From Trichosphaerium sp. ATCC 40318 (taxonomy: Eukaryota > Protista > Tubulinea): a stretch of 64,000 nt of DNA. The notes under the pieces were generated by a model. It did not search any database and was not told where the DNA came from. It saw only the letters and a program-made list of their open reading frames with translations. The stretch spans positions 310,001-374,000 of the forward strand of contig JALMLS010000612.1 in the NCBI GenBank assembly GCA_038496445.1, given 5' to 3'. Of the stretch, positions 21,925 through 59,900 are shown piece by piece. The position numbers and the translations under genes are program-made. The stretch's first letter is position 1; every line of letters begins with the position of its first letter.

Positions 21925-22028
21925 GAAGAACAACAGCAACGCGTTGCAGGATACGTTGGGAGGTGGAAAAACTGTGAAATTTCGGCTTGTTTAAACTGTT
22001 TGAACGACCTTTTAGCCTTGTAGTAAAG

Positions 22029-22886
22029 ATGCTTAAATTCGCAAAGTATCATGGGTTAGGAAACGATTTTATAATGTTAGACAACAGGGACGCGAAAATT
22101 AATCTAACGCAGAAACAAATAGCGAGATTGTGTAAACGGCACGTTGGCATTGGTGCTGATGGTATTATTCTCCTACAACATGGAAACGAACAAAATGACG
22201 CTAAAAAACCTAAGCAAGCCACCTACGGCATGCATATGTTTAACGCAGACGGCACAGTGTCAGAAACTTGCGGAAATGGTATTAGATGCTTAGCACGTTA
22301 CATTGTTGATACAATAGGTTCACAGGGCAATGACTTTAAACTATATACCATGGCAGGTATTGTAGGCATTAAACTTCTCCCTTCAGGAAAGATAACGGTA
22401 GATATGGGTCTTCCAAAATTGCTAGCAGAACAAATACCAACGACTATCAGTAAAAGAAACGAAAGAGTCATTGACAATCAACTAGATGTCTGTGGAACAC
22501 ATTGGTCGGTGACATGTGTCAATATGGGGAATCCTCACTGTGTTACATTTGTTGAAAATGTAGAAACAATAGATTTAAATGAAATTGGACCAAAGTTCGA
22601 AAACCACCAAGTTTTTCCTCAACGCGTCAATACAGAGTTCATTCAGGTCTTAAATGAGCATCATGTAATCATGCGTGTTTGGGAGCGTGGTTCTGGTGCT
22701 ACACTTGCTTGTGGTAGTGGTGCATGTGCCTCAGCAGTAGCATCAATCTTGTCAAACAGATGTACATCTCCTGTTCTCGTTGACTTACCTGGAGGTCCTT
22801 TGGAGATTACTTGGAGCGGAGAAAACTGTAATGTTGTGATGACTGGACCTGCTGTACATGTTTTCAATGGTGAGGTAAAGGTGTGA
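22029..22886 (+). CDS. dapF: Diaminopimelate epimerase, intronless
   Basis: KYHGLGNDF, GIGADG, CGNGIRC, NMGNPH and RVWERGSGATLACGSGAC, with both catalytic Cys present. ATG at 22029. Confidence 0.97.
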   Translation: MLKFAKYHGLGNDFIMLDNRDAKINLTQKQIARLCKRHVGIGADGIILLQHGNEQNDAKKPKQATYGMHMFNADGTVSETCGNGIRCLARYIVDTIGSQGNDFKLYTMAGIVGIKLLPSGKITVDMGLPKLLAEQIPTTISKRNERVIDNQLDVCGTHWSVTCVNMGNPHCVTFVENVETIDLNEIGPKFENHQVFPQRVNTEFIQVLNEHHVIMRVWERGSGATLACGSGACASAVASILSNRCTSPVLVDLPGGPLEITWSGENCNVVMTGPAVHVFNGEVKV

Positions 22887-28375: not shown

Positions 28376-29386
28376 ATGCATAAAGCTGCGCATTTTACTA
28401 CTGAATTTAAGAAGCTACGCCAAATGCAAACCGAACACTATTCTACGAACGTTTGTAATCTTCTACGACTTCCAAAAGACGTTCAAAGGTATTTATGTGC
28501 TTTCAATGACGAAACCTTTACAAAGTACAATATACTATCAAAAACAGCGGCTACGAACACACACTATGATAGTAATCTAAAGAAAAATGGTGTTTGGATT
28601 AAATGGTACAAAGACGGGAGTTTAAAAAGCAAAGAAATGATGTCAGATGGTAAAAGGAATGGAGAGATGAAAAAGTGGCATAAGAATGGAAAACTATTGT
28701 TCAAGTCATGGTACAAGGATAATGAGAGGCATGGTAAGTACGAGAGTTGGCATAAAGAAGGACAACGTCATGTAACAGGTTCGTTCACCAATGGAAAGGT
28801 GAACGGTGAAGCATGGAGATGGTATGAGAATGGTCAACTAAGGATACATAGTTTTTATGTTAATGATAAGAAAGACGGTGTCCTCACCCAATGGTATATG
28901 AGTGGGCAGCTCCAATTAGAAAATATGTTTGATAATGGCAAGAAGCATGGTGACCGCAAGGAGTGGTATAGGAATGGACAACTGATGTCACTTTCAAAGT
29001 TTGTTCAAGACAAGTGCGCTGGGCTCACTCTGTGGTATAAAAATGGTCAAATGAAGTTAAACACTATGTATGTTGATGGTAAGATGCATGGTGAGCACAA
29101 ACGGTGGTTTGAAGACGGGCAAATGAGTAAAGATGAACATTATGTTAATGGCTATCAAAAAGGTGATGTATATCATTGGCATAGAAATGGTCAACTTGCA
29201 GTGCATAATTTCTTTGTTGATGGAAAGAAGAGTGGTGAGGGCAAGGAGTGGTATGAAAATGGTCAGTTAAAGATGCAAGGTAACTTCATCAATGGTATTG
29301 TACATGGGGAATACAAAGAGTGGAATGAGGACGGAGAGCTCACCCTTGAAAAAACTTTCAATAATTTTCCAGATGTACAAGTATAA
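28376..29386 (+). CDS. F-box-like N-terminus plus 11 MORN-variant (MORN_2/YwqK-type) repeats, intronless
   Basis: 336-aa ORF. LLRLPKDVQRYLCAF resembles an F-box start, followed by about 24-aa repeats of the form xxGxxxxWYxNGQLxxxxxFxxGK. Confidence 0.85.
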   Translation: MHKAAHFTTEFKKLRQMQTEHYSTNVCNLLRLPKDVQRYLCAFNDETFTKYNILSKTAATNTHYDSNLKKNGVWIKWYKDGSLKSKEMMSDGKRNGEMKKWHKNGKLLFKSWYKDNERHGKYESWHKEGQRHVTGSFTNGKVNGEAWRWYENGQLRIHSFYVNDKKDGVLTQWYMSGQLQLENMFDNGKKHGDRKEWYRNGQLMSLSKFVQDKCAGLTLWYKNGQMKLNTMYVDGKMHGEHKRWFEDGQMSKDEHYVNGYQKGDVYHWHRNGQLAVHNFFVDGKKSGEGKEWYENGQLKMQGNFINGIVHGEYKEWNEDGELTLEKTFNNFPDVQV

Positions 29387-44645: not shown

Positions 44646-45963
44646 ATGGAAAATTCTGTTTTTTTTCGTATTTTTATTACACATAACCCCAATTTGGTGG
44701 CAGGTGATCTATGTATCCGTTCTTATGCTTTCAAATATGTATAAGTGCTATTTTAACTATGCATAAGCTTGATAGAGGGCCGTATGTGGCTTGGTTGTTT
44801 TTTTATTTTACAATAGTGTTTGTATTACACTGGGTAGGCTTCATATACGTTGTTTCTTGTATCCTATACTCTTTTTGCTCGAGTTGACGTTTGTAATTCA
44901 TATTTCCTTAACAATAGACACCAATTTCGTTCTATTCGAGTGGTTCAACTATGCAATGGCTGTTGTAGCGTTTTATTTCCATTACAAGGTAAAATCGGTT
45001 TAAATAAGTGAAAATAATGTTTTAGGTATGTTCTTCAGATCCTGGGTACCTATCACGCGTTGACAACAGAACAAGTGGATGGAAATTTTGTGACACTTGT
45101 CAAGTAATTCTTTTTTTCGAAAAATTGAGCCAAAAACGCCATTATTCACTTCAATATAGATATGGAGGCCTTTACGTGCTAAACACTGTGGTATTTGTAA
45201 CAGATGCGTAACTAAATTTGATCATCATTGCCCAATAGTACGACATTAAATTCAAAAACATTTTTTCGTTTCATGTCTTGACTGACTTGTTACTAAAACC
45301 AAAGGTAAACAATTGTGTTGGACAGCGTAATTATAAGTTTTTTTGGTTATTTTTACTGTTCCAGACAATAAGCTTGTCTTGTGGTATTGTATACTTGGTA
45401 GATTGTACGAAATAATTTGAGTGTCTGACACTTTAAATGCATTGATCACATGACTGATTTTTTGTTGCAATTTAGATTTCACGAAACGTCAACCTGACTT
45501 CCGACCAACACTGTTATTATTTTCTAGGCACCGCCTATTGGTAATGTACGTTGTATTTATAGCGTTTAAGAGAGCAACATGCGGTGTTTGTGTTAGATTG
45601 ACTGACATTCAGCATGCAGAAGAATTTGACGCTTGATTTTTTTTAACCTAATATTTGTGACATTGTAGGTGCTTTGGTATGGGTGCTGTTATTATTTTGG
45701 GTGTTGGATTTGGTCTTGCTTTGGTAACATATTCGGTTTTTTGTAACATTACGTTGAATGAAGTAATCAACAGGTTTGTATTTGGATACAATTCTACACT
45801 CTTTATGAAGGAAGAAGACTCAATTGTTTTAGGCACAAGTATTCGTATACATCTCTATGGCCTTGGAAAAACAAATTTAATAAAGGTATAATATCTAACT
45901 TTATGACATCAATGGATATCGTTCGTGAAGAGCCTGTTTACGATCAATAACAAAAATAACTGA
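44646..45963 (+). CDS. DHHC palmitoyltransferase (second copy)
   Basis: [45 protein letters not shown] plus TM segments. Ends approximate. Confidence 0.88.
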
Positions 45964-46038
45964 AAAAAAAAGATGGGAAAAAAAATAAATAAAGGCACAA
46001 TAGCTACTTTGCTGCAGTAGGTTTTATTGATGAGTGTT

Positions 46039-47240
46039 TCAAAAACTGAGTACATCGAAATGCATTGACTCAACATACAATTCAACTGTAAACCTAGCAA
46101 CACCTCCTGTTTCTTGTTGGTTCTCTCTTTCCAATGAAATGATACCAACATGGTTAAAACGAACTGTACCAAGTTCTTCACGTAAGTCAGCCCCCAAGAA
46201 ACTGAGCGAACCACCCTTTTCGTCAGTGTCCGTACATTGGCCATCAATAACAAAGTGCTGCAAAAAAAGTCAAATTTAGAAGATGTAAACACGTGATTTA
46301 GATCAAAATATCCGTACCGTGTACCATTCCATCCAAGCATCAATATCAGCTGTGCTGATAGATACTTTCAAGTTACTCACTTTTGGTGGGTCTGGTTGCC
46401 TGTTATACTGTCTATCGGTTACAACCTTTTGTTCCCATGTGAAACTATCAATCTTGGCAATGCGTTCGCAAGGTAGACCGTCCAATTCAAGTCTAAAGTT
46501 GCTAACCAACCATTTCTTGGAGTTAGCATTCTCATCACCTTGTATTGGCTGGCCACTGCCTCTACAACTAACGTTAGCACATACAAACAAACAAAAAAAC
46601 AGTTCGGGTTGTACTTTGTGTATTGGATTATTTCGGGCTGTATCTGGACGCTCAGGTACCCAGGTTCATTGCTAGAACTATCACATGTTGGAACAGTAAC
46701 TGTTGTTATGTGGGCGTTATGAAAAGTGCGGAAGTCCTTTGTGGACGGATCTGATATCTCAACTGTTCGATAATGATGAGCTCCGACAACTAAAAACGAT
46801 AAACAATAAATTCAATTGATTTGTGGTGCCAACTTACCACTTGTTTGCATTGATACCCAATCAAGCAACTCTTGGTTCTGACTAAGTCCCATGGCAACTT
46901 CCATCGTCAATGGTTCATGGTTAATGGTGCTAAGGTGTTTCCTTTCAAAATTGCTAGTGCCAACAGACGAAGTGGTCTCTACAACGCCTTTTATTGTGCC
47001 TAAAAAATACCTCAAAACACAGACCCAAAACGAAGCTGGAAACCCGCATTAATTAACAAGAAAATTTACCTCCACTGACGTAATTTAATAACCCTCCTGG
47101 TCGCCTGTTTACTGTTGCTGTATAGTGAGCTCTTGAAATACAAACGGCGAAGGCTAGTATAAGAAAGCAGCTTGCTGTTCTAAATACGTAGGTAAGCAAT
47201 ACTGTAAAAGATGGAGGTAAGATAATGGGATGTACCTCAT
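46039..47240 (-). CDS. Secreted phage-tail-tube-like protein (tandem T4 gp19/CIS tube-like domains), 6 exons, 304 aa
   Basis: Exons 47240-47236, 47179-47070, 46999-46838, 46789-46615, 46561-46318 and 46257-46039 total 915 nt in frame, all introns GT-AG. Signal peptide MRTASCFLILAFAVCISRA. Motifs KHLSTINHEPLTMEV, ELLDWV, HITTVTVPTCDSSSNEPGYL, KKWLVSNFRLELDGL, NLKVSISTADIDAWMEW and ARFTVELYVESM. Confidence 0.8.
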
Positions 47241-47923
47241 TTTGTTGGTTTTTTGCTATGGTGTATTCGTTCACGTGCGTTAAGCTACTATTCGGTGAAG
47301 CCCAAAACGGTTCACATCTAAAACGAGCAACTTCGTGATGCCAACATCCCCAACAAAACTTGGATAGCCAGCAGCTAGTATGACGACCGATAGCAGTCAA
47401 ACCGGACAATTTATTGTCCAAGTTTTTGCAAAAGCTGAAAAAGCATTATAAGTATTCAACCAGGTCAACCCCACCACGTATGAGTACATGAGAAGTTTAA
47501 AAAAATCGAGTGTTTGTTATCACGCTATCCTATTGTTCTTAAGAGAATCGATAATTCGGCTGAATAGTGTCTTCGGAACTTCCGTACTGCTTACGAAAAA
47601 TATGGCGTCACTTCATGAACAGAACCTGCAGCATACAATTTTGTCTCATATGTCTTCCAACTTAAACGAGGGCTCGCTGGTTGGTAAAATTGCTTCTGTA
47701 GTACTATGTACTAAAATCAGTCATTGTTACGCCAATAGGATGATAAGAGATACAAGTAACTTTACGTTGTTAACAATAGGTTCGTAAGCATTAAGAAAGC
47801 TGCAGTACATGTGTAGGTAAACTGAGGAGCGCTCAAGGATAAGGAAAAAGTAATCCTTTTTTTTTGTTACTCACGTGTTTGTTATCGAGTTGCTATCAAG
47901 TTGGCGGGTGGCAATTGATTTAA

Positions 47924-56933: not shown

Positions 56934-59900
56934 ATGCGCCTCCTTTTTATTCTCGGGGCACTCTTGTTCATAAGTGCTGTTGCCCAGACAGACTTTTCTC
57001 TAAGCACTATCTTTGATTCGTATCAAGATATCCTGGTTAACCACCAAGCCAATGATACCATCACTACGGCGACTATAAATACGAACCCTACTCAAGCTAT
57101 TGGTGGTAGTAGGACTGTAACTGCTAGCCTTGACAGTTTCATTATCACTCCTGCCTCTGTTAATTGCAATCCTACCGGCGGTACTTTAGGCGATTTCTCC
57201 TTTTCTTCTGAGGGTGGTGGCGTTGAAGGATCTTGTACACTTACCTATGACAGCCTTACTGACGGAGATTTCGCTCCAACTATAGGCTTCACTCAACTAC
57301 CTCTTGGCGCAAGTACGTGCACGGTTTAACAGCTTTTCTCTTTATTAATTTTTTTTTTCTAGGTTGCTGGATTCTCAACACACGAGTCATCTCTGGGGAT
57401 ACTGATGTAACTTTCATTGCTGATACAACATCAGGCCCATCCACTGCCACCCATAGAGTATTAGATACCGATGGCGAAGTTGTGACGTATTGTATTCCAT
57501 TCCCTGGTGCTGATCTTAACGCCTTGACTGCTGTAACTGGCGTAACACAAATACTGGAGACTGGTTCTCTTGACTCTGATTTACTTGTTGATTCCATTTG
57601 CGTTTCTCCTCAAGTCGTCTGCTCTCACGAACTTGAACTCGCCAACGGTGATCCTGTACCACCAGAGGGGGTACCAGTAGGTACGTTGCCGTAAACGTGA
57701 TATAATTTTTTTTTATTTGGATAAAAAATCTCCGTTCAGATCATAGTAGCTAACTATTATTATAGGTACAACCGTGAGCGTAGAATTTACTTGTATCAAT
57801 TTCCCATCGATCCCTTCACCTGCGGTCAACGTCAACATTAATTTCGACCTACCACTTGCTTTTGCAGTTGTAGACCAAGTATCTAGATCATGCACCAGTA
57901 ATTTCGGTTTCGTACGTGGTCTTTTTGTTATGTGGCTGTACCAAGTTTAGCGTCGTATTAATAATATATAATAGGTTAGCCCTGGTATTGCAAATGGTAT
58001 AGCCATAAATGGTTTTAGCATCTCTGAAAGCGGTTTTGTATCTTGTGAATTTGACTTTACTACTCAAGGTACTAAAATCCAACGCTTGCTTAACTAAACT
58101 AACTTAATCACAGCTCCTGCTGCTATCAGCGCACGTGTGGTACTCACAGAGGTGGCTTCTGGTATCGCAAGTTTCTCAGGTCAAGGTCCTCGGTGCGTTG
58201 ACCTTTTTTTTTTTTTTTTTGCTGTTAATCTGTCAAGTTCTTACGTTACTTAGTACTTTATGTGATACACCTCAGAATTTTACAAACAACGTCATAATTC
58301 AATCTGCGCCTACTGTTGCTCCTACAAACGCACCAACAGTCCCACCTACTGTTGCTCCGGTCACGCTAACTCCTACGAATGCACCAGTTCCACCTCCAAC
58401 TGCGCCACCTACGAATGCTCCATTCGGTGTAATTACGCCAACGAATGCACCATTCCCACCTCCAACAGAGCCACCTACGAACGCACCAGTTGTTGTAACT
58501 TCTCCAACGAATGCTCCATTCCCGCCACCAACTGAGCCACCAACGAATGCACCATTTGCTACAATAACACCAACAAACGCGCCATTCCCGCCACCAACTG
58601 AGCCACCAACGAATGCACCATTTGCTACGATAACACCTACGAATGCTCCATTCCCACCTCCAACAGACCCACCTACGAATGCTCCATTCCCACCTCCAAC
58701 GAACTCTCCAACGAATTCGCCAACTAATGCGCCAGTTACTGCTCCACCAACGAATGCTCCGTTCCCACCTCCAACAGACCCTCCAACGAACGCTCCATTC
58801 CCACCTCCAACGAACTCTCCAACGAATTCACCAACCAATGCGCCAGTTACTGCTCCACCAACGAATGCTCCGTTCCCACCTCCAACAGATGCACCAACGA
58901 ACGCGCCATTCCCACCACCAACGAACTCCCCAACGAACGCGCCAACCAACCCACCAACGAATCCTCCAACAGCTCCACCAACGAATGCACCATTCCCACC
59001 TCCAACAGCTCCACCAACGAACGCGCCATTCCCACCACCAACGAACTCTCCAACGAACGCGCCAACCAATGCGCCAGTCACCGCGCCACCAACGAATGCT
59101 CCATTCCCACCTCCAACAGATGCACCAACAAATGCGCCATTCCCTCCTCCAACCAATTCACCAACGAACGCGCCAACGAATGCACCAACTCTTCCACCAA
59201 CGAATGCACCAACGAACGCTCCTTTCCCACCACCTACCAACGCTCCTACCAATGCTCCTCTTGGATGCAATCCTTTCACACTTGCTGGAGGAGTATTCCC
59301 AGATGGTGCTTACACACTCATTGATGGAGCCAACGTCGAAGCACCTCCAGATTACTGTGTTCGCTTTGATGGATTTACCCTTGACAACGTACTCACTTTT
59401 TTCTTTCTTTTTTTTGCCATTACCTGTGTTGGTTGTTGCTAATCTCTTTACATAGCCTAACGATGTTCTCACATTCACTTGCTCAGCAAATGCTATGAGA
59501 ATTGAATTTGACTCTACTGCACGCACTATCACTGTTGTAGGTATCATCAGTGGTGGTGAAGATGTTGGAGCTGTAAGAGTAAATGAAAGCATTGGCTCTA
59601 CTTCCCTCACCTTCACGTACGATCCTTTCCTCTAACCACGTTTGTACTAATTTTCGAAACCATAGAAATGTTACTGTAGAAGGTACAGCACCAAACTACT
59701 ACTTGGTATCAAGAGACATCAACGACGGATTCTTTTTCTTCAGAGTACATAAAAAACAATATCCAATTTTCTTTTTCCTTTTAACACTCTTCTTCAGCAA
59801 CAATTCTTCGTAATCCGTTCTTTTGGCGCTGAATCAGCTCGCGTTTCGCCTATTGGAAATGGTCAATTCAACTTCTTGTACGTTTTATCCTAAACCTGCA

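What the first reader, a model, noticed from the sequence alone, without database searches (positions are those of the whole stretch)
46039..47240. Spliced, signal-peptide-bearing phage-tail/contractile-injection tube protein in a eukaryote
Seen: six exons and five canonical GT-AG introns of host type give an intact 304-aa ORF. It begins with a classical signal peptide (MRTASCFLILAFAVCISRA) and lies between ordinary eukaryotic genes (DHHC, ARM), so bacterial contamination is unlikely. Recognised from memory: the mature part follows the two-domain 'phage tail protein' (T4 gp19/Afp1-5-like tube fold) of myxobacterial and related eCIS-type loci. Matches in domain 1 are KH..I.HEPLTM.V...LLDW and ITTVTVP.CD.S.EPGYL. 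Matches in domain 2 are KKWL.SNFRLELDGLPC.R.AKIDSFTW.Q, NLK..IS.AD...W..W..FVIDG, GSL.FLG.DL.EEL...F..VGIISL and ARF.VELYVE.M. Bacterial tube proteins are cytoplasmic and lack signal peptides. Inference: the protist acquired a tube gene by HGT (perhaps from prey bacteria), gained introns and a signal peptide, and routes it through the ER. It could polymerise into extracellular or extrusome nanotubes (coat, adhesion, or prey/competitor attack). I see no sheath, baseplate or spike gene in this window, so it may act alone as a repurposed filament or with partners encoded elsewhere.
Basis: partly seen in the sequence, partly recalled or inferred. Interest (0 to 1): 0.95.

Follow-up and report, generated by a model that had tools for sequence, protein, structure and literature searches.

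The report
Spliced, secreted phage-tail tube gene in a protist
A single-celled eukaryote carries and expresses a gene with five introns for a double-domain "tail tube" protein taken from bacterial contractile injection systems, now fitted with a secretion signal and separated from all other parts of the machine; what it does there is unknown.

Summary
On the minus strand, six exons (47240-46039) give an intact 304-aa ORF. All five GT-AG introns are removed in cDNA contigs, and one 1007-nt contig carries all five joints.

The protein aligns end to end (about 50% identity, E 1e-100) with roughly 300-aa bacterial proteins made of two PF06841 tube domains. An AlphaFold model of the closest relative (pLDDT 88.6) matches fused-double tail tubes (T5 pb6, P74-26). 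Each half matches CIS tubes such as Afp1 and Pvc1.

The closest bacterial relatives are of two kinds. Some lie in a conserved Myxococcota-type CIS locus: cap, small sheath, tandem tube, p138, large sheath, single tube. Others are orphan copies.

About a quarter of the bacterial representatives have Sec-, Tat- or lipoprotein-like N-termini. All three such genes whose contexts I inspected are orphans with no CIS genes nearby.

The window holds no sheath, cap or single-tube gene. The first-stage scan noted a second copy elsewhere in this genome.

I read it as an old, ameliorated, expressed HGT. Secretion, ring or tube assembly and biological role remain inferred. I could not fold the exact spliced protein, because no reference exists for a spliced sequence.

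The parts
46004..47286 (-). Transcribed unit (mRNA) of the tandem tube gene
   Evidence: cDNA contigs. X3 record 5 spans 47286..46014 and X1 record 2 reaches 46004. A SMART oligo is fused at 47286.
47241..47286 (-). 5' UTR with no upstream AUG
   Evidence: read directly from the sequence.
47236..47240 (-). Exon 1 coding part (ATGAG: Met plus 2 nt of Arg2)
   Evidence: Joint 47179|47236 in X3; model.
47180..47235 (-). Intron 1, 56 nt, GT..AG
47070..47179 (-). Exon 2: rest of the signal peptide and first beta-strand of domain 1
47128..47179 (-). Signal-peptide coding part (with exon 1: residues 1-19, MRTASCFLILAFAVCISRA). It has a positive n-region, a 14-residue uncharged h-region, and S at -3 and A at -1.
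   Evidence: Read from the sequence. The 10-residue Kyte-Doolittle maximum is 3.25. The two substitutions here in the organism-C variant are both synonymous. No SignalP was available.
47000..47069 (-). Intron 2, 70 nt, GT..AG
   Evidence: three runs.
46838..46999 (-). Exon 3
   Evidence: Weak PF06841 hit, E 0.052.
46790..46837 (-). Intron 3, 48 nt, GT..AG
   Evidence: four runs.
46615..46789 (-). Exon 4
46562..46614 (-). Intron 4, 53 nt, GT..AG
   Evidence: three runs. X6 has the same joint beside a 9-nt divergent stretch.
46318..46561 (-). Exon 5 (end of domain 1, linker, first half of domain 2)
   Evidence: phmmer gave 404 hits at E<1e-3. The nearest Atlas clusters are PF06841 and Myxococcota.
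46258..46317 (-). Intron 5, 60 nt, GT..AG
   Evidence: four runs.
46039..46257 (-). Exon 6 coding part, with stop TGA at 46041-46039
46558..47127 (-). Tube domain 1 (residues ~20-152, interrupted by introns 2-4)
   Evidence: hhalign against single-domain CIS tubes: probability 92%, E 7e-7. The PDB profile hits fall on this half.
46042..46527 (-). Tube domain 2 (residues ~163-304, interrupted by intron 5)
   Evidence: hhalign domain 1 against domain 2: probability 89%, E 2e-6. It forms the second beta-barrel plus helix in the model of the 50%-identical homologue.
46023..46028 (-). AATAAA polyadenylation signal, 11 nt after the stop
   Evidence: cDNA contigs end 10-20 nt downstream.

Best explanation
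This is a nuclear gene of a protist that descends from a bacterial tandem (double-domain) tube protein of a Myxococcota-type contractile injection system.

Shown here:
- The gene has five spliceosomal introns, host-like base composition and eukaryotic neighbours.
- It is transcribed and correctly spliced, and it has kept almost all family-invariant residues.
- Its closest relative (50% identity) folds as two fused tube domains.

Inferred:
- The N-terminal 19 residues act as a cleavable ER signal.
- The mature ~285-aa protein therefore enters the secretory pathway.
- Like other fused-double tube proteins (T5 pb6, P74-26), three copies form a pseudo-hexameric ring that may stack into a sheath-less tube.
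- It works without sheath, baseplate or spike, possibly together with its paralogue. Its role would be as a secreted or vesicle-lumen structural or binding module at the interface with bacteria.

Bacteria have made the same move repeatedly. Orphan, signal-peptide-bearing copies of this tandem protein exist with no CIS genes nearby.
For: Gene model and splicing. One contig carries all five joints, and the 5' end is marked by a SMART oligo.

Homology:
- Exon 5 alone finds 404 cluster representatives.
- The spliced protein aligns over residues 16-303 with P0391 (50% identity, E 3e-100) and many others.
- Relatives pass the PF06841 gathering score.
- A family profile that includes the window's exons hits solved CIS tubes: 8bl4 at E 7.6e-9, also Afp1, Pvc1 and Anabaena All3324.

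Fold: the AF2 model of P0391 has pLDDT 88.6 and pTM 0.86. Foldseek matches the whole model to T5 pb6, DT57C and P74-26 tail tubes (E 8e-9 to 2e-7, TMq 0.57-0.65). Its halves match Algoriphagus, AFP, PVC and Anabaena tubes (TMt 0.67-0.78). Trimeric rings from fused tube subunits in T5 are described in PMC8718954.

Internal duplication.

Conservation:
- 30 of 35 columns that are at least 90% conserved are retained, with only three short indels.
- The organism-C variant has 4 synonymous and 2-3 non-synonymous changes.

Bacterial contexts:
- CIS-embedded.
- Orphan without signal peptide.
- Orphan with signal peptide.

No hits in phages or plasmids. The scan noted a second copy in the same genome (s1-372443; not checked by me).
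Against: - Secretion rests only on inspection of the N-terminus. No signal-peptide predictor or proteome was available.
- The exact window protein could not be folded, so the fold evidence comes from a 50%-identical proxy.
- The oligomeric state is untested. Even T5 pb6 needs a trigger to polymerise (PMC8718954).
- The window branch is long (1.26 against a median of 0.23), so function may have changed.
- Domain 2 by itself links only weakly to single-domain tubes (hhalign E 0.005).
- What the tandem protein does inside bacterial CIS particles is itself unknown.
- The closest homologues score far below the curated CIS1 and CIS5 cut-offs.
Confidence: 0.5

Rival explanations
1. The protein is not released. 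The hydrophobic N-terminus delivers it, cleaved or as a signal anchor, into an internal compartment such as an extrusome, dense vesicle or phagosome. There it serves as lumenal cargo or scaffold, for example as the shaft of an ejectable organelle or an agent acting on ingested bacteria.
For: It shares the sequence facts of the main reading. There is precedent for a bacterial polymer protein becoming a protist extrusome component: cryptomonad ejectisome ribbons are built from R-body (Reb) homologues (Yamagishi et al. 2012, listed in the references of PMC3982174). The scan's notes describe this genome as rich in secreted proteins of bacterial origin, including lysozyme, RlpA and alginate lyase (unchecked).
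Against: There is no localisation data. No retention or sorting motif is obvious. The c-region S-R-A looks cleavable, which argues against an anchor.
Confidence: 0.2
2. It does not polymerise. It acts as a soluble binder or decoy that recognises bacterial CIS or phage-tail parts (sheath, cap, tube ends) or bacterial surfaces. This would make it a defence of a bacterivore against injection systems aimed at eukaryotes, or a lectin-like opsonin.
For: It is a long, fast-evolving branch, as are the bacterial signal-bearing orphans. Orphan secreted copies in bacteria have no partner genes nearby. Family-invariant core residues are retained, but there is a 5-residue loop deletion in domain 2.
Against: There is no direct evidence of any binding activity. 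No PADLOC defence family matches the relatives. The conserved residues include those of the whole tube core, which is also what an assembling protein would keep.
Confidence: 0.15
3. It is one part of a complete eukaryote-encoded contractile or tailocin-like machine. The sheath, baseplate, spike or fibre genes lie elsewhere in the genome.
For: The scan noted spliced, secreted tail-fibre- and tail-collar-like genes on other pieces of this genome (s1-372467 and s1-372966; unchecked).
Against: tblastn with cap, both sheaths, p138, the single tube and p497 from the matching bacterial loci finds nothing in the 64-kb window. None of the genome's 2,492 scan notes so far mentions sheath, baseplate, VgrG, PAAR or spike. 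A sheath-driven machine assembled inside the ER lumen has no precedent.
Confidence: 0.05
4. It is a transcribed but functionless relic of HGT, or an assembly or contamination artefact.
For: The branch is long. No close orthologue was found in the protein collections.
Against: Five introns are removed precisely in cDNA from several runs and at least three organism labels. The ORF is intact. 30 of 35 invariant columns are kept. Synonymous changes outnumber non-synonymous ones in the variant. The neighbours are eukaryotic. GC is ameliorated to 0.43, against 0.47-0.67 in bacterial relatives.
Confidence: 0.03

Closest known systems
Tandem (two-domain) PF06841 'phage tail protein' of Myxococcota-type CIS loci (e.g. 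Haliangium ochraceum P0236; MAG copies P0195, L016, P0017)
   Same: About 300 aa with two tube domains in one chain. Collinear alignment at 44-50% identity with no large indels, and the same invariant residues. The window protein falls among these in the tree (UFboot 81 / SH-aLRT 95).
   Different: The bacterial genes are intronless, lack a signal peptide and sit between the small sheath and p138 in a cap-sheath-tandem-p138-sheath-tube locus. The window gene has five introns and a signal peptide, with no CIS neighbours. The role of the tandem protein in the bacterial particle is undescribed as far as I could find.
Orphan, signal-peptide-bearing tandem gp19-like proteins of bacteria (P0006, P0021, P0063, P0002 and others)
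   Same: The same two-domain family, an N-terminal export signal and no sheath or baseplate genes within 8 kb either side. Branches are long, like the window's. A clade with the window protein is not rejected (AU p 0.36).
   Different: Only 30-40% identical to the window protein. They are prokaryotic genes using Sec, Tat or lipoprotein signals, and their function is also unknown. The best tree puts them outside the group that holds the window protein.
Single-domain CIS inner tube proteins (Afp1/Afp5, Pvc1/Pvc5, Algoriphagus Cis1, Anabaena All3324, Streptomyces CIS tube; NCBIfam CIS1/CIS5; T4 gp19)
   Same: Each half of the family model superposes on them (TMt 0.67-0.78). The family profile hits their sequences. 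Domain 1 against the single tubes of the same loci gives E 7e-7.
   Different: These have one domain of ~150 aa forming hexamers, are cytoplasmic and are always co-encoded with a sheath. The closest tandem relatives score 20-22 bits against cut-offs of 220-260 for CIS1 and CIS5.
Fused-double major tail proteins of siphophages (T5 pb6, DT57C, P74-26 TTP)
   Same: These are the best whole-chain structural matches (E 8e-9 to 2e-7, TMq up to 0.65). Two tube domains in one chain give trimeric, pseudo-hexameric rings without a sheath (PMC8718954).
   Different: About 10% sequence identity, and no tblastn hit of exon 5 in 50,697 phage records. This is an independent fusion, an analogue of architecture rather than a relative by descent.
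Cryptomonad ejectisome ribbon proteins derived from bacterial R-body (Reb) proteins
   Same: Precedent for a bacterial self-assembling polymer protein taken over by a protist for an extrusive organelle (Yamagishi et al. 2012, cited in PMC3982174).
   Different: Unrelated protein family and fold. For the window gene no organelle link is known.

Membership tests
Pfam PF06841 Phage_T4_gp19 (tail tube superfamily) | Match to the profile at or above the gathering score (28.2 bits) | tested here: inconclusive
   Only single exons could be scanned by reference. Exon 3 scores 13.8 bits, E 0.052; exons 4-6 score nothing. Relatives that align end to end with the spliced protein (E 1e-59 to 1e-72) pass: P0003 34.2, P0040 48.3, P0004 53.1 and P0036 42.3 bits. 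The full spliced protein has no reference and was not scanned.
Pfam PF06841 Phage_T4_gp19 (tail tube superfamily) | Tube fold (beta-barrel-forming sheet plus one helix) shared with solved tubes | tested here: met
   Tested by proxy. The AF2 model of P0391 (50% identical, pLDDT 88.6) superposes on AFP, PVC, AlgoCIS, Anabaena and T4 tubes (TMt 0.6-0.78, probability 1.0). A family profile containing the window's exons hits 8bl4, 6rao, 6j0b and 7b5h.
Tandem-tube subfamily of Myxococcota-type CIS loci (unnamed) | Two tube domains in one ~300-aa chain, collinear with family members | tested here: met
   blastp over residues 16-303 against 6-298 of P0391, E 3e-100. 30 of 35 invariant columns kept. 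Domain 1 against domain 2 by hhalign: E 2e-6.
Tandem-tube subfamily of Myxococcota-type CIS loci (unnamed) | Encoded between the small sheath and p138 within a CIS gene cluster | tested here: not met
   No tblastn hit (E 1e-5) for cap, sheaths, p138, single tube or p497 in the window. However, bacterial members P0198, P0392 and P0005 are orphans too, so this feature does not hold for all members.
CIS inner tube / tube adaptor (NCBIfam CIS1_fam NF053769, CIS5_fam NF053770; TIGR02241) | Score above the curated cut-off | tested here: not met
   Closest relatives: CIS5 20-22 bits against a cut-off of 260; TIGR02241 27-46 bits against 62.4; no CIS1 hit. The window's exons give no NCBIfam hit.
Contractile injection system (as a system) | Sheath, baseplate, spike and cap genes present with the tube | tested here: not met
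   None in the 64-kb window. None is mentioned in this genome's scan notes.
Contractile injection system (as a system) | Tube subunit made and assembled in the cytoplasm (no export signal) | tested here: not met
   The window protein starts with an n/h/c-type signal sequence.
Fused-double siphophage tail tube proteins (T5 pb6 / P74-26 TTP) | Sequence relatedness to phage members | tested here: not met
   9-11% identity in the structural alignments. No tblastn hit in the phage collection.
Fused-double siphophage tail tube proteins (T5 pb6 / P74-26 TTP) | Trimeric pseudo-hexameric ring that stacks into a tube | not testable with these tools
   No multimer prediction or experiment was available. 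Only the monomer architecture matches.
Eukaryotic secretory-pathway protein | Cleavable N-terminal signal peptide | tested here: inconclusive
   Inspected by rule only: Arg2, an uncharged 14-residue core (Kyte-Doolittle maximum 3.25), S at -3 and A at -1, followed directly by the first tube strand. No SignalP run or proteomics.

The most novel reading that the evidence does not exclude
A protist has taken the tube, and only the tube, of a bacterial contractile injection system. It routes the protein through the ER and builds sheath-less protein nanotubes or rings from it, either outside the cell or inside an ejectable organelle. That would be a second, independent case, after R-body-derived ejectisomes, of a bacterial self-assembling weapon part becoming a eukaryotic structure. 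The same stand-alone secreted tube biology would then also exist, undescribed, in many bacteria.
Probability: 0.2. Interest if true: 0.9.

Novelty: new variant of a known kind. Interest (0 to 1): 0.65.

Why it matters
Tail-tube proteins are known only as parts of phage tails, tailocins, eCIS and T6SS, all made in the prokaryotic cytoplasm beside a sheath or a tape measure. In this gene the tube module has been cut loose, moved into a eukaryotic nucleus, given introns and an ER signal, duplicated and kept expressed.

Two consequences follow.

- It is a clean, testable case of a eukaryote domesticating a structural, self-assembling phage-tail part rather than an enzyme.
- Following it up exposed a sizeable bacterial class of orphan tandem tube proteins, with and without export signals, that have no CIS neighbours and that I could not find described. 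The tube fold may therefore have a stand-alone extracytoplasmic function.

A short, naturally secreted, ring- or tube-forming protein would also interest people who engineer protein nanotubes. My literature searches found no report of a eukaryotic PF06841 gene, but the library is incomplete.

Tried and rejected
1. Pfam and NCBIfam scans of single exons gave only one weak hit. The exons are too short, so I used relatives instead.

2. I tried to recover the window's own protein or close eukaryotic orthologues from the 5.8-billion-cluster collection. The queries were profiles seeded with the window's exons. Nothing closer than 50% identity came back, so no protein id for the exact sequence was available.

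3. Several steps were left out because the spliced 304-aa sequence has no reference and I did not type it in: folding, a family scan of the whole protein, cluster look-up and contig look-up.

4. Short or fragment hits that might have been eukaryotic exon pieces turned out to be bacterial. P0007 is a remnant and P0017 is a frameshifted CIS copy. The low-GC Logan contig of P0013 also looks bacterial.

5. A phage or plasmid origin found no support: no tblastn hit.

6. No PADLOC defence-system family matched.

7. I tried to identify the host organism through the intronless DapF gene. Only cyanobacterial relatives at about 55% identity came back. Rfam and tRNA scans of the window were empty.

8. 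The genome-contig scan returned only 5 loci because of the pattern limits.

9. The tree could not name a donor. The window protein is a long branch in a polytomy, and the alternative grouping with signal-bearing orphans is not rejected.
Full report
OBSERVATION

I read the region on the minus strand and rebuilt the model by script. The exons are 47240-47236, 47179-47070, 46999-46838, 46789-46615, 46561-46318 and 46257-46039. The five introns are 56, 70, 48, 53 and 60 nt, all GT..AG, and are more AT-rich (GC 0.29-0.36) than the CDS (0.43).

The odd-looking 5-nt first coding exon is real. Laying four public runs on 45600-47600 showed every one of the five joints in cDNA contigs. Three joints each appear in three or four runs. 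One 1007-nt contig (run X3, no mismatches) runs from 47286 to 46014 with all five introns removed. Its 5' end is fused to the SMART template-switch oligo, which marks the mRNA start. There is no AUG between 47286 and 47240. AATAAA lies 11 nt after the stop, and contigs end shortly after it.

The same experiment confirmed an intron (45772-45830) in the neighbouring plus-strand gene. The neighbours are eukaryotic: a DHHC exon (E 1e-10), Adaptin_N and mitochondrial ribosomal protein S34. Contamination by bacterial DNA is excluded.

WHAT IT IS

The single exons are too short for Pfam (one weak PF06841 hit, E 0.052). However, exon 5 alone, searched with phmmer against 1.8 billion cluster representatives, found 404 proteins at E<1e-3, most of them about 300 aa long. 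The protein-language-model atlas placed exon 5 next to PF06841 clusters from Myxococcota.

The spliced protein aligns from about residue 16-30 to about residue 300 with these proteins. After a second profile search, the best is P0391: 50% identity, E 3e-100, residues 16-303 against 6-298. The alignment runs across all exon junctions without gaps, which independently validates the splice model. The relatives pass the PF06841 gathering score.

A family profile that includes the window's exons hits solved CIS tube proteins by sequence: Streptomyces CIS 8bl4 at E 7.6e-9, also Afp1, Pvc1 and Anabaena All3324. hhalign, with the window sequence as master, shows that the two halves are homologous to each other (E 2e-6). 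Domain 1 is homologous to the single-domain tubes of the same bacterial loci (E 7e-7). Domain 2 is more divergent.

I could not fold the exact protein, because a spliced sequence has no reference and I did not type it in. I folded P0391 instead, using a 44-row alignment. The result was pLDDT 88.6 and pTM 0.86, with two beta-barrel-plus-helix domains. Foldseek against the PDB gave fused-double tail tube proteins as the best whole-chain matches: T5 pb6, DT57C and P74-26 (E 8e-9 to 2e-7). It gave CIS tubes as half-chain matches: Algoriphagus, AFP, PVC, Anabaena, Streptomyces and T4 gp19 (TMt 0.6-0.78).

The window protein keeps 30 of 35 columns that are at least 90% conserved in the family. It differs from P0391 only by three short indels in loops.

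WHERE IT CAME FROM

Named relatives are Haliangium, Kofleriaceae, other Myxococcota or "delta-proteobacterial" MAGs, Nitrospirales, Chloroflexota and Symbiobacteriaceae. Exon 5 has no tblastn hit in 50,697 phage or 72,556 plasmid records.

Genomic contexts fall into three classes.

(a) CIS-embedded. This is a conserved order: Pvc16_N cap, small sheath, tandem tube, a ~138-aa protein, (DUF6760), large sheath, single 149-155-aa tube. It is seen in Haliangium ochraceum, L008, L011/L019 and L016.

(b) Orphans without an export signal: P0198, P0392 and P0005. One MAG has both a CIS copy and an orphan copy.

(c) Orphans with an export signal: P0006, P0021 (two adjacent copies) and P0063 (next to TamB and Omp85). 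None has sheath or baseplate genes within 8 kb.

By a crude rule, about 25 of 89 full-length cluster representatives have such N-termini, including Tat-like and lipobox examples.

In a careful tree the window protein is a long branch (1.26 against a median of 0.23). It sits inside the group that holds the Haliangium-type CIS copies and signal-less orphans (UFboot 81 / SH-aLRT 95). It has no resolved sister. A clade with the signal-bearing orphans is not rejected (AU p 0.36). The donor lineage is therefore Myxococcota-like CIS-type at the family level. Whether the signal came along with the gene or was added in the eukaryote remains open.

The transfer is not recent:
- five introns;
- GC 0.43, against 0.47-0.67 in relatives;
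- at most 50% identity to anything bacterial;
- a second spliced, signal-bearing copy reported by the scan on another piece of this genome (s1-372443; not checked by me).

A 95-99% identical variant in another organism label differs by 4 synonymous and 2-3 non-synonymous changes. Both changes inside the signal peptide are synonymous. This is a small sample, but it points to constraint.

HOW IT LIKELY WORKS

Shown: the gene is expressed and spliced, it is a tandem tube family member, it has an N-terminal n/h/c signal-like segment followed directly by the first tube strand, and it has no CIS partner in 64 kb.

Inferred: ER import and cleavage near A19|H20, followed by assembly of three chains into a pseudo-hexameric ring. 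Fusion of two tube subunits has this effect in T5 pb6, whose tubes form without a sheath but need a trigger (PMC8718954). The rings might stack. The protein would act at the cell surface, in the medium, or in a vesicle or extrusome.

I give the whole chain of inference 0.5. Rival readings are an internal compartment or extrusome cargo (0.2), a non-polymerising binder or decoy against bacterial CIS or phage tails (0.15), one part of a full eukaryotic machine (0.05), and a relic or artefact (0.03). The R-body to ejectisome case (Yamagishi et al. 2012, cited in PMC3982174) shows that such a take-over is possible.

COMPARISON AND NOVELTY

By sequence, the protein is a member of the unnamed tandem-tube subfamily within PF06841. 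It is not a CIS1 or CIS5 equivalog: relatives score 20-22 bits against cut-offs of 220-260. As encoded here, it is not part of a contractile injection system. It resembles T5 pb6 and P74-26 only in architecture.

Literature searches found no eukaryotic PF06841 gene and no description of the tandem or secreted orphan class. I rate it a new variant of a known kind, with interest 0.65. It is solidly real and unusual for a structural phage-tail part. However, the function is unknown, and HGT of secreted bacterial proteins appears common in this genome.

LIMITS

- The host organism is not identified. An intronless DapF gene is of cyanobacterial type, and Rfam and tRNA scans were empty.
- No signal-peptide predictor, no multimer modelling and no whole-genome search were available.

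Noticed in passing
L003, L004, L008, L011/L019, L016 (bacterial loci): There is a conserved CIS locus type: Pvc16_N cap, small sheath (~400 aa), tandem two-domain tube (~300 aa), ~138-aa protein (weak Gp41_Mu-like), DUF6760, large sheath (585 aa), single-domain tube (149-155 aa), ~497-aa protein. It carries both a tandem and a single tube gene. I did not find the tandem protein's role described.
   Followed up: partly
L012 8001-8987, L013 8001-9985, L014 8001-8909 (bacterial loci): Orphan tandem gp19-like proteins with Sec-type signal peptides and no CIS genes within 8 kb. L013 has two adjacent copies among sulfatases and peptidases. The L014 copy lies directly after TamB and an Omp85/TamA-like gene. 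About a quarter of family representatives have such N-termini, some of them Tat- or lipobox-like.
   Followed up: partly
P0096 (1943 aa): A giant protein with three PF06841 domains, a CIS_tube domain, several Ig-like domains (ASH/HYDIN-like, Big_7) and DUF4214. The tube domains are fused into a large, probably surface protein.
   Followed up: no
L009 6001-6273: A 90-aa remnant of the tandem tube gene (70% identical to exon 5 over 46 aa) sits alone in a bacterial chromosome between a peptidase M29 gene and a Uma2 gene. It is a decayed orphan copy.
   Followed up: partly
window 21987-22886 (+): An intronless 285-299-aa diaminopimelate epimerase (DapF). Its best relatives are cyanobacterial (53-56% identity). 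This points either to plastid-related ancestry or to another bacterial acquisition, and the gene lies in an otherwise intron-rich region.
   Followed up: partly
window 58135-59442 (+): A long ORF of proline-rich PTNAPFPPPT-type repeats behind a hydrophobic N-terminus. It coincides with a local GC rise (0.47) and a strong negative GC skew (-0.36) at 58-60 kb. It is probably a secreted or cell-surface repeat protein.
   Followed up: no
window 28376-29386 (+): An intronless 336-aa ORF made almost entirely of MORN-like repeats.
   Followed up: no
window 46039-47240, run X6 (organism C): A 95-99% identical transcript variant carried under a different organism label. It has 6 point changes and a 9-nt divergent stretch at the start of exon 5 (G154N). 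It may be a related strain or species, or the same protist living with another organism.
   Followed up: partly
window 45669-45899 (+): The 3' part of the neighbouring DHHC palmitoyltransferase gene has a 59-nt GT..AG intron (45772-45830), confirmed in cDNA. The two genes converge, with about 100 nt between their transcript ends.
   Followed up: partly
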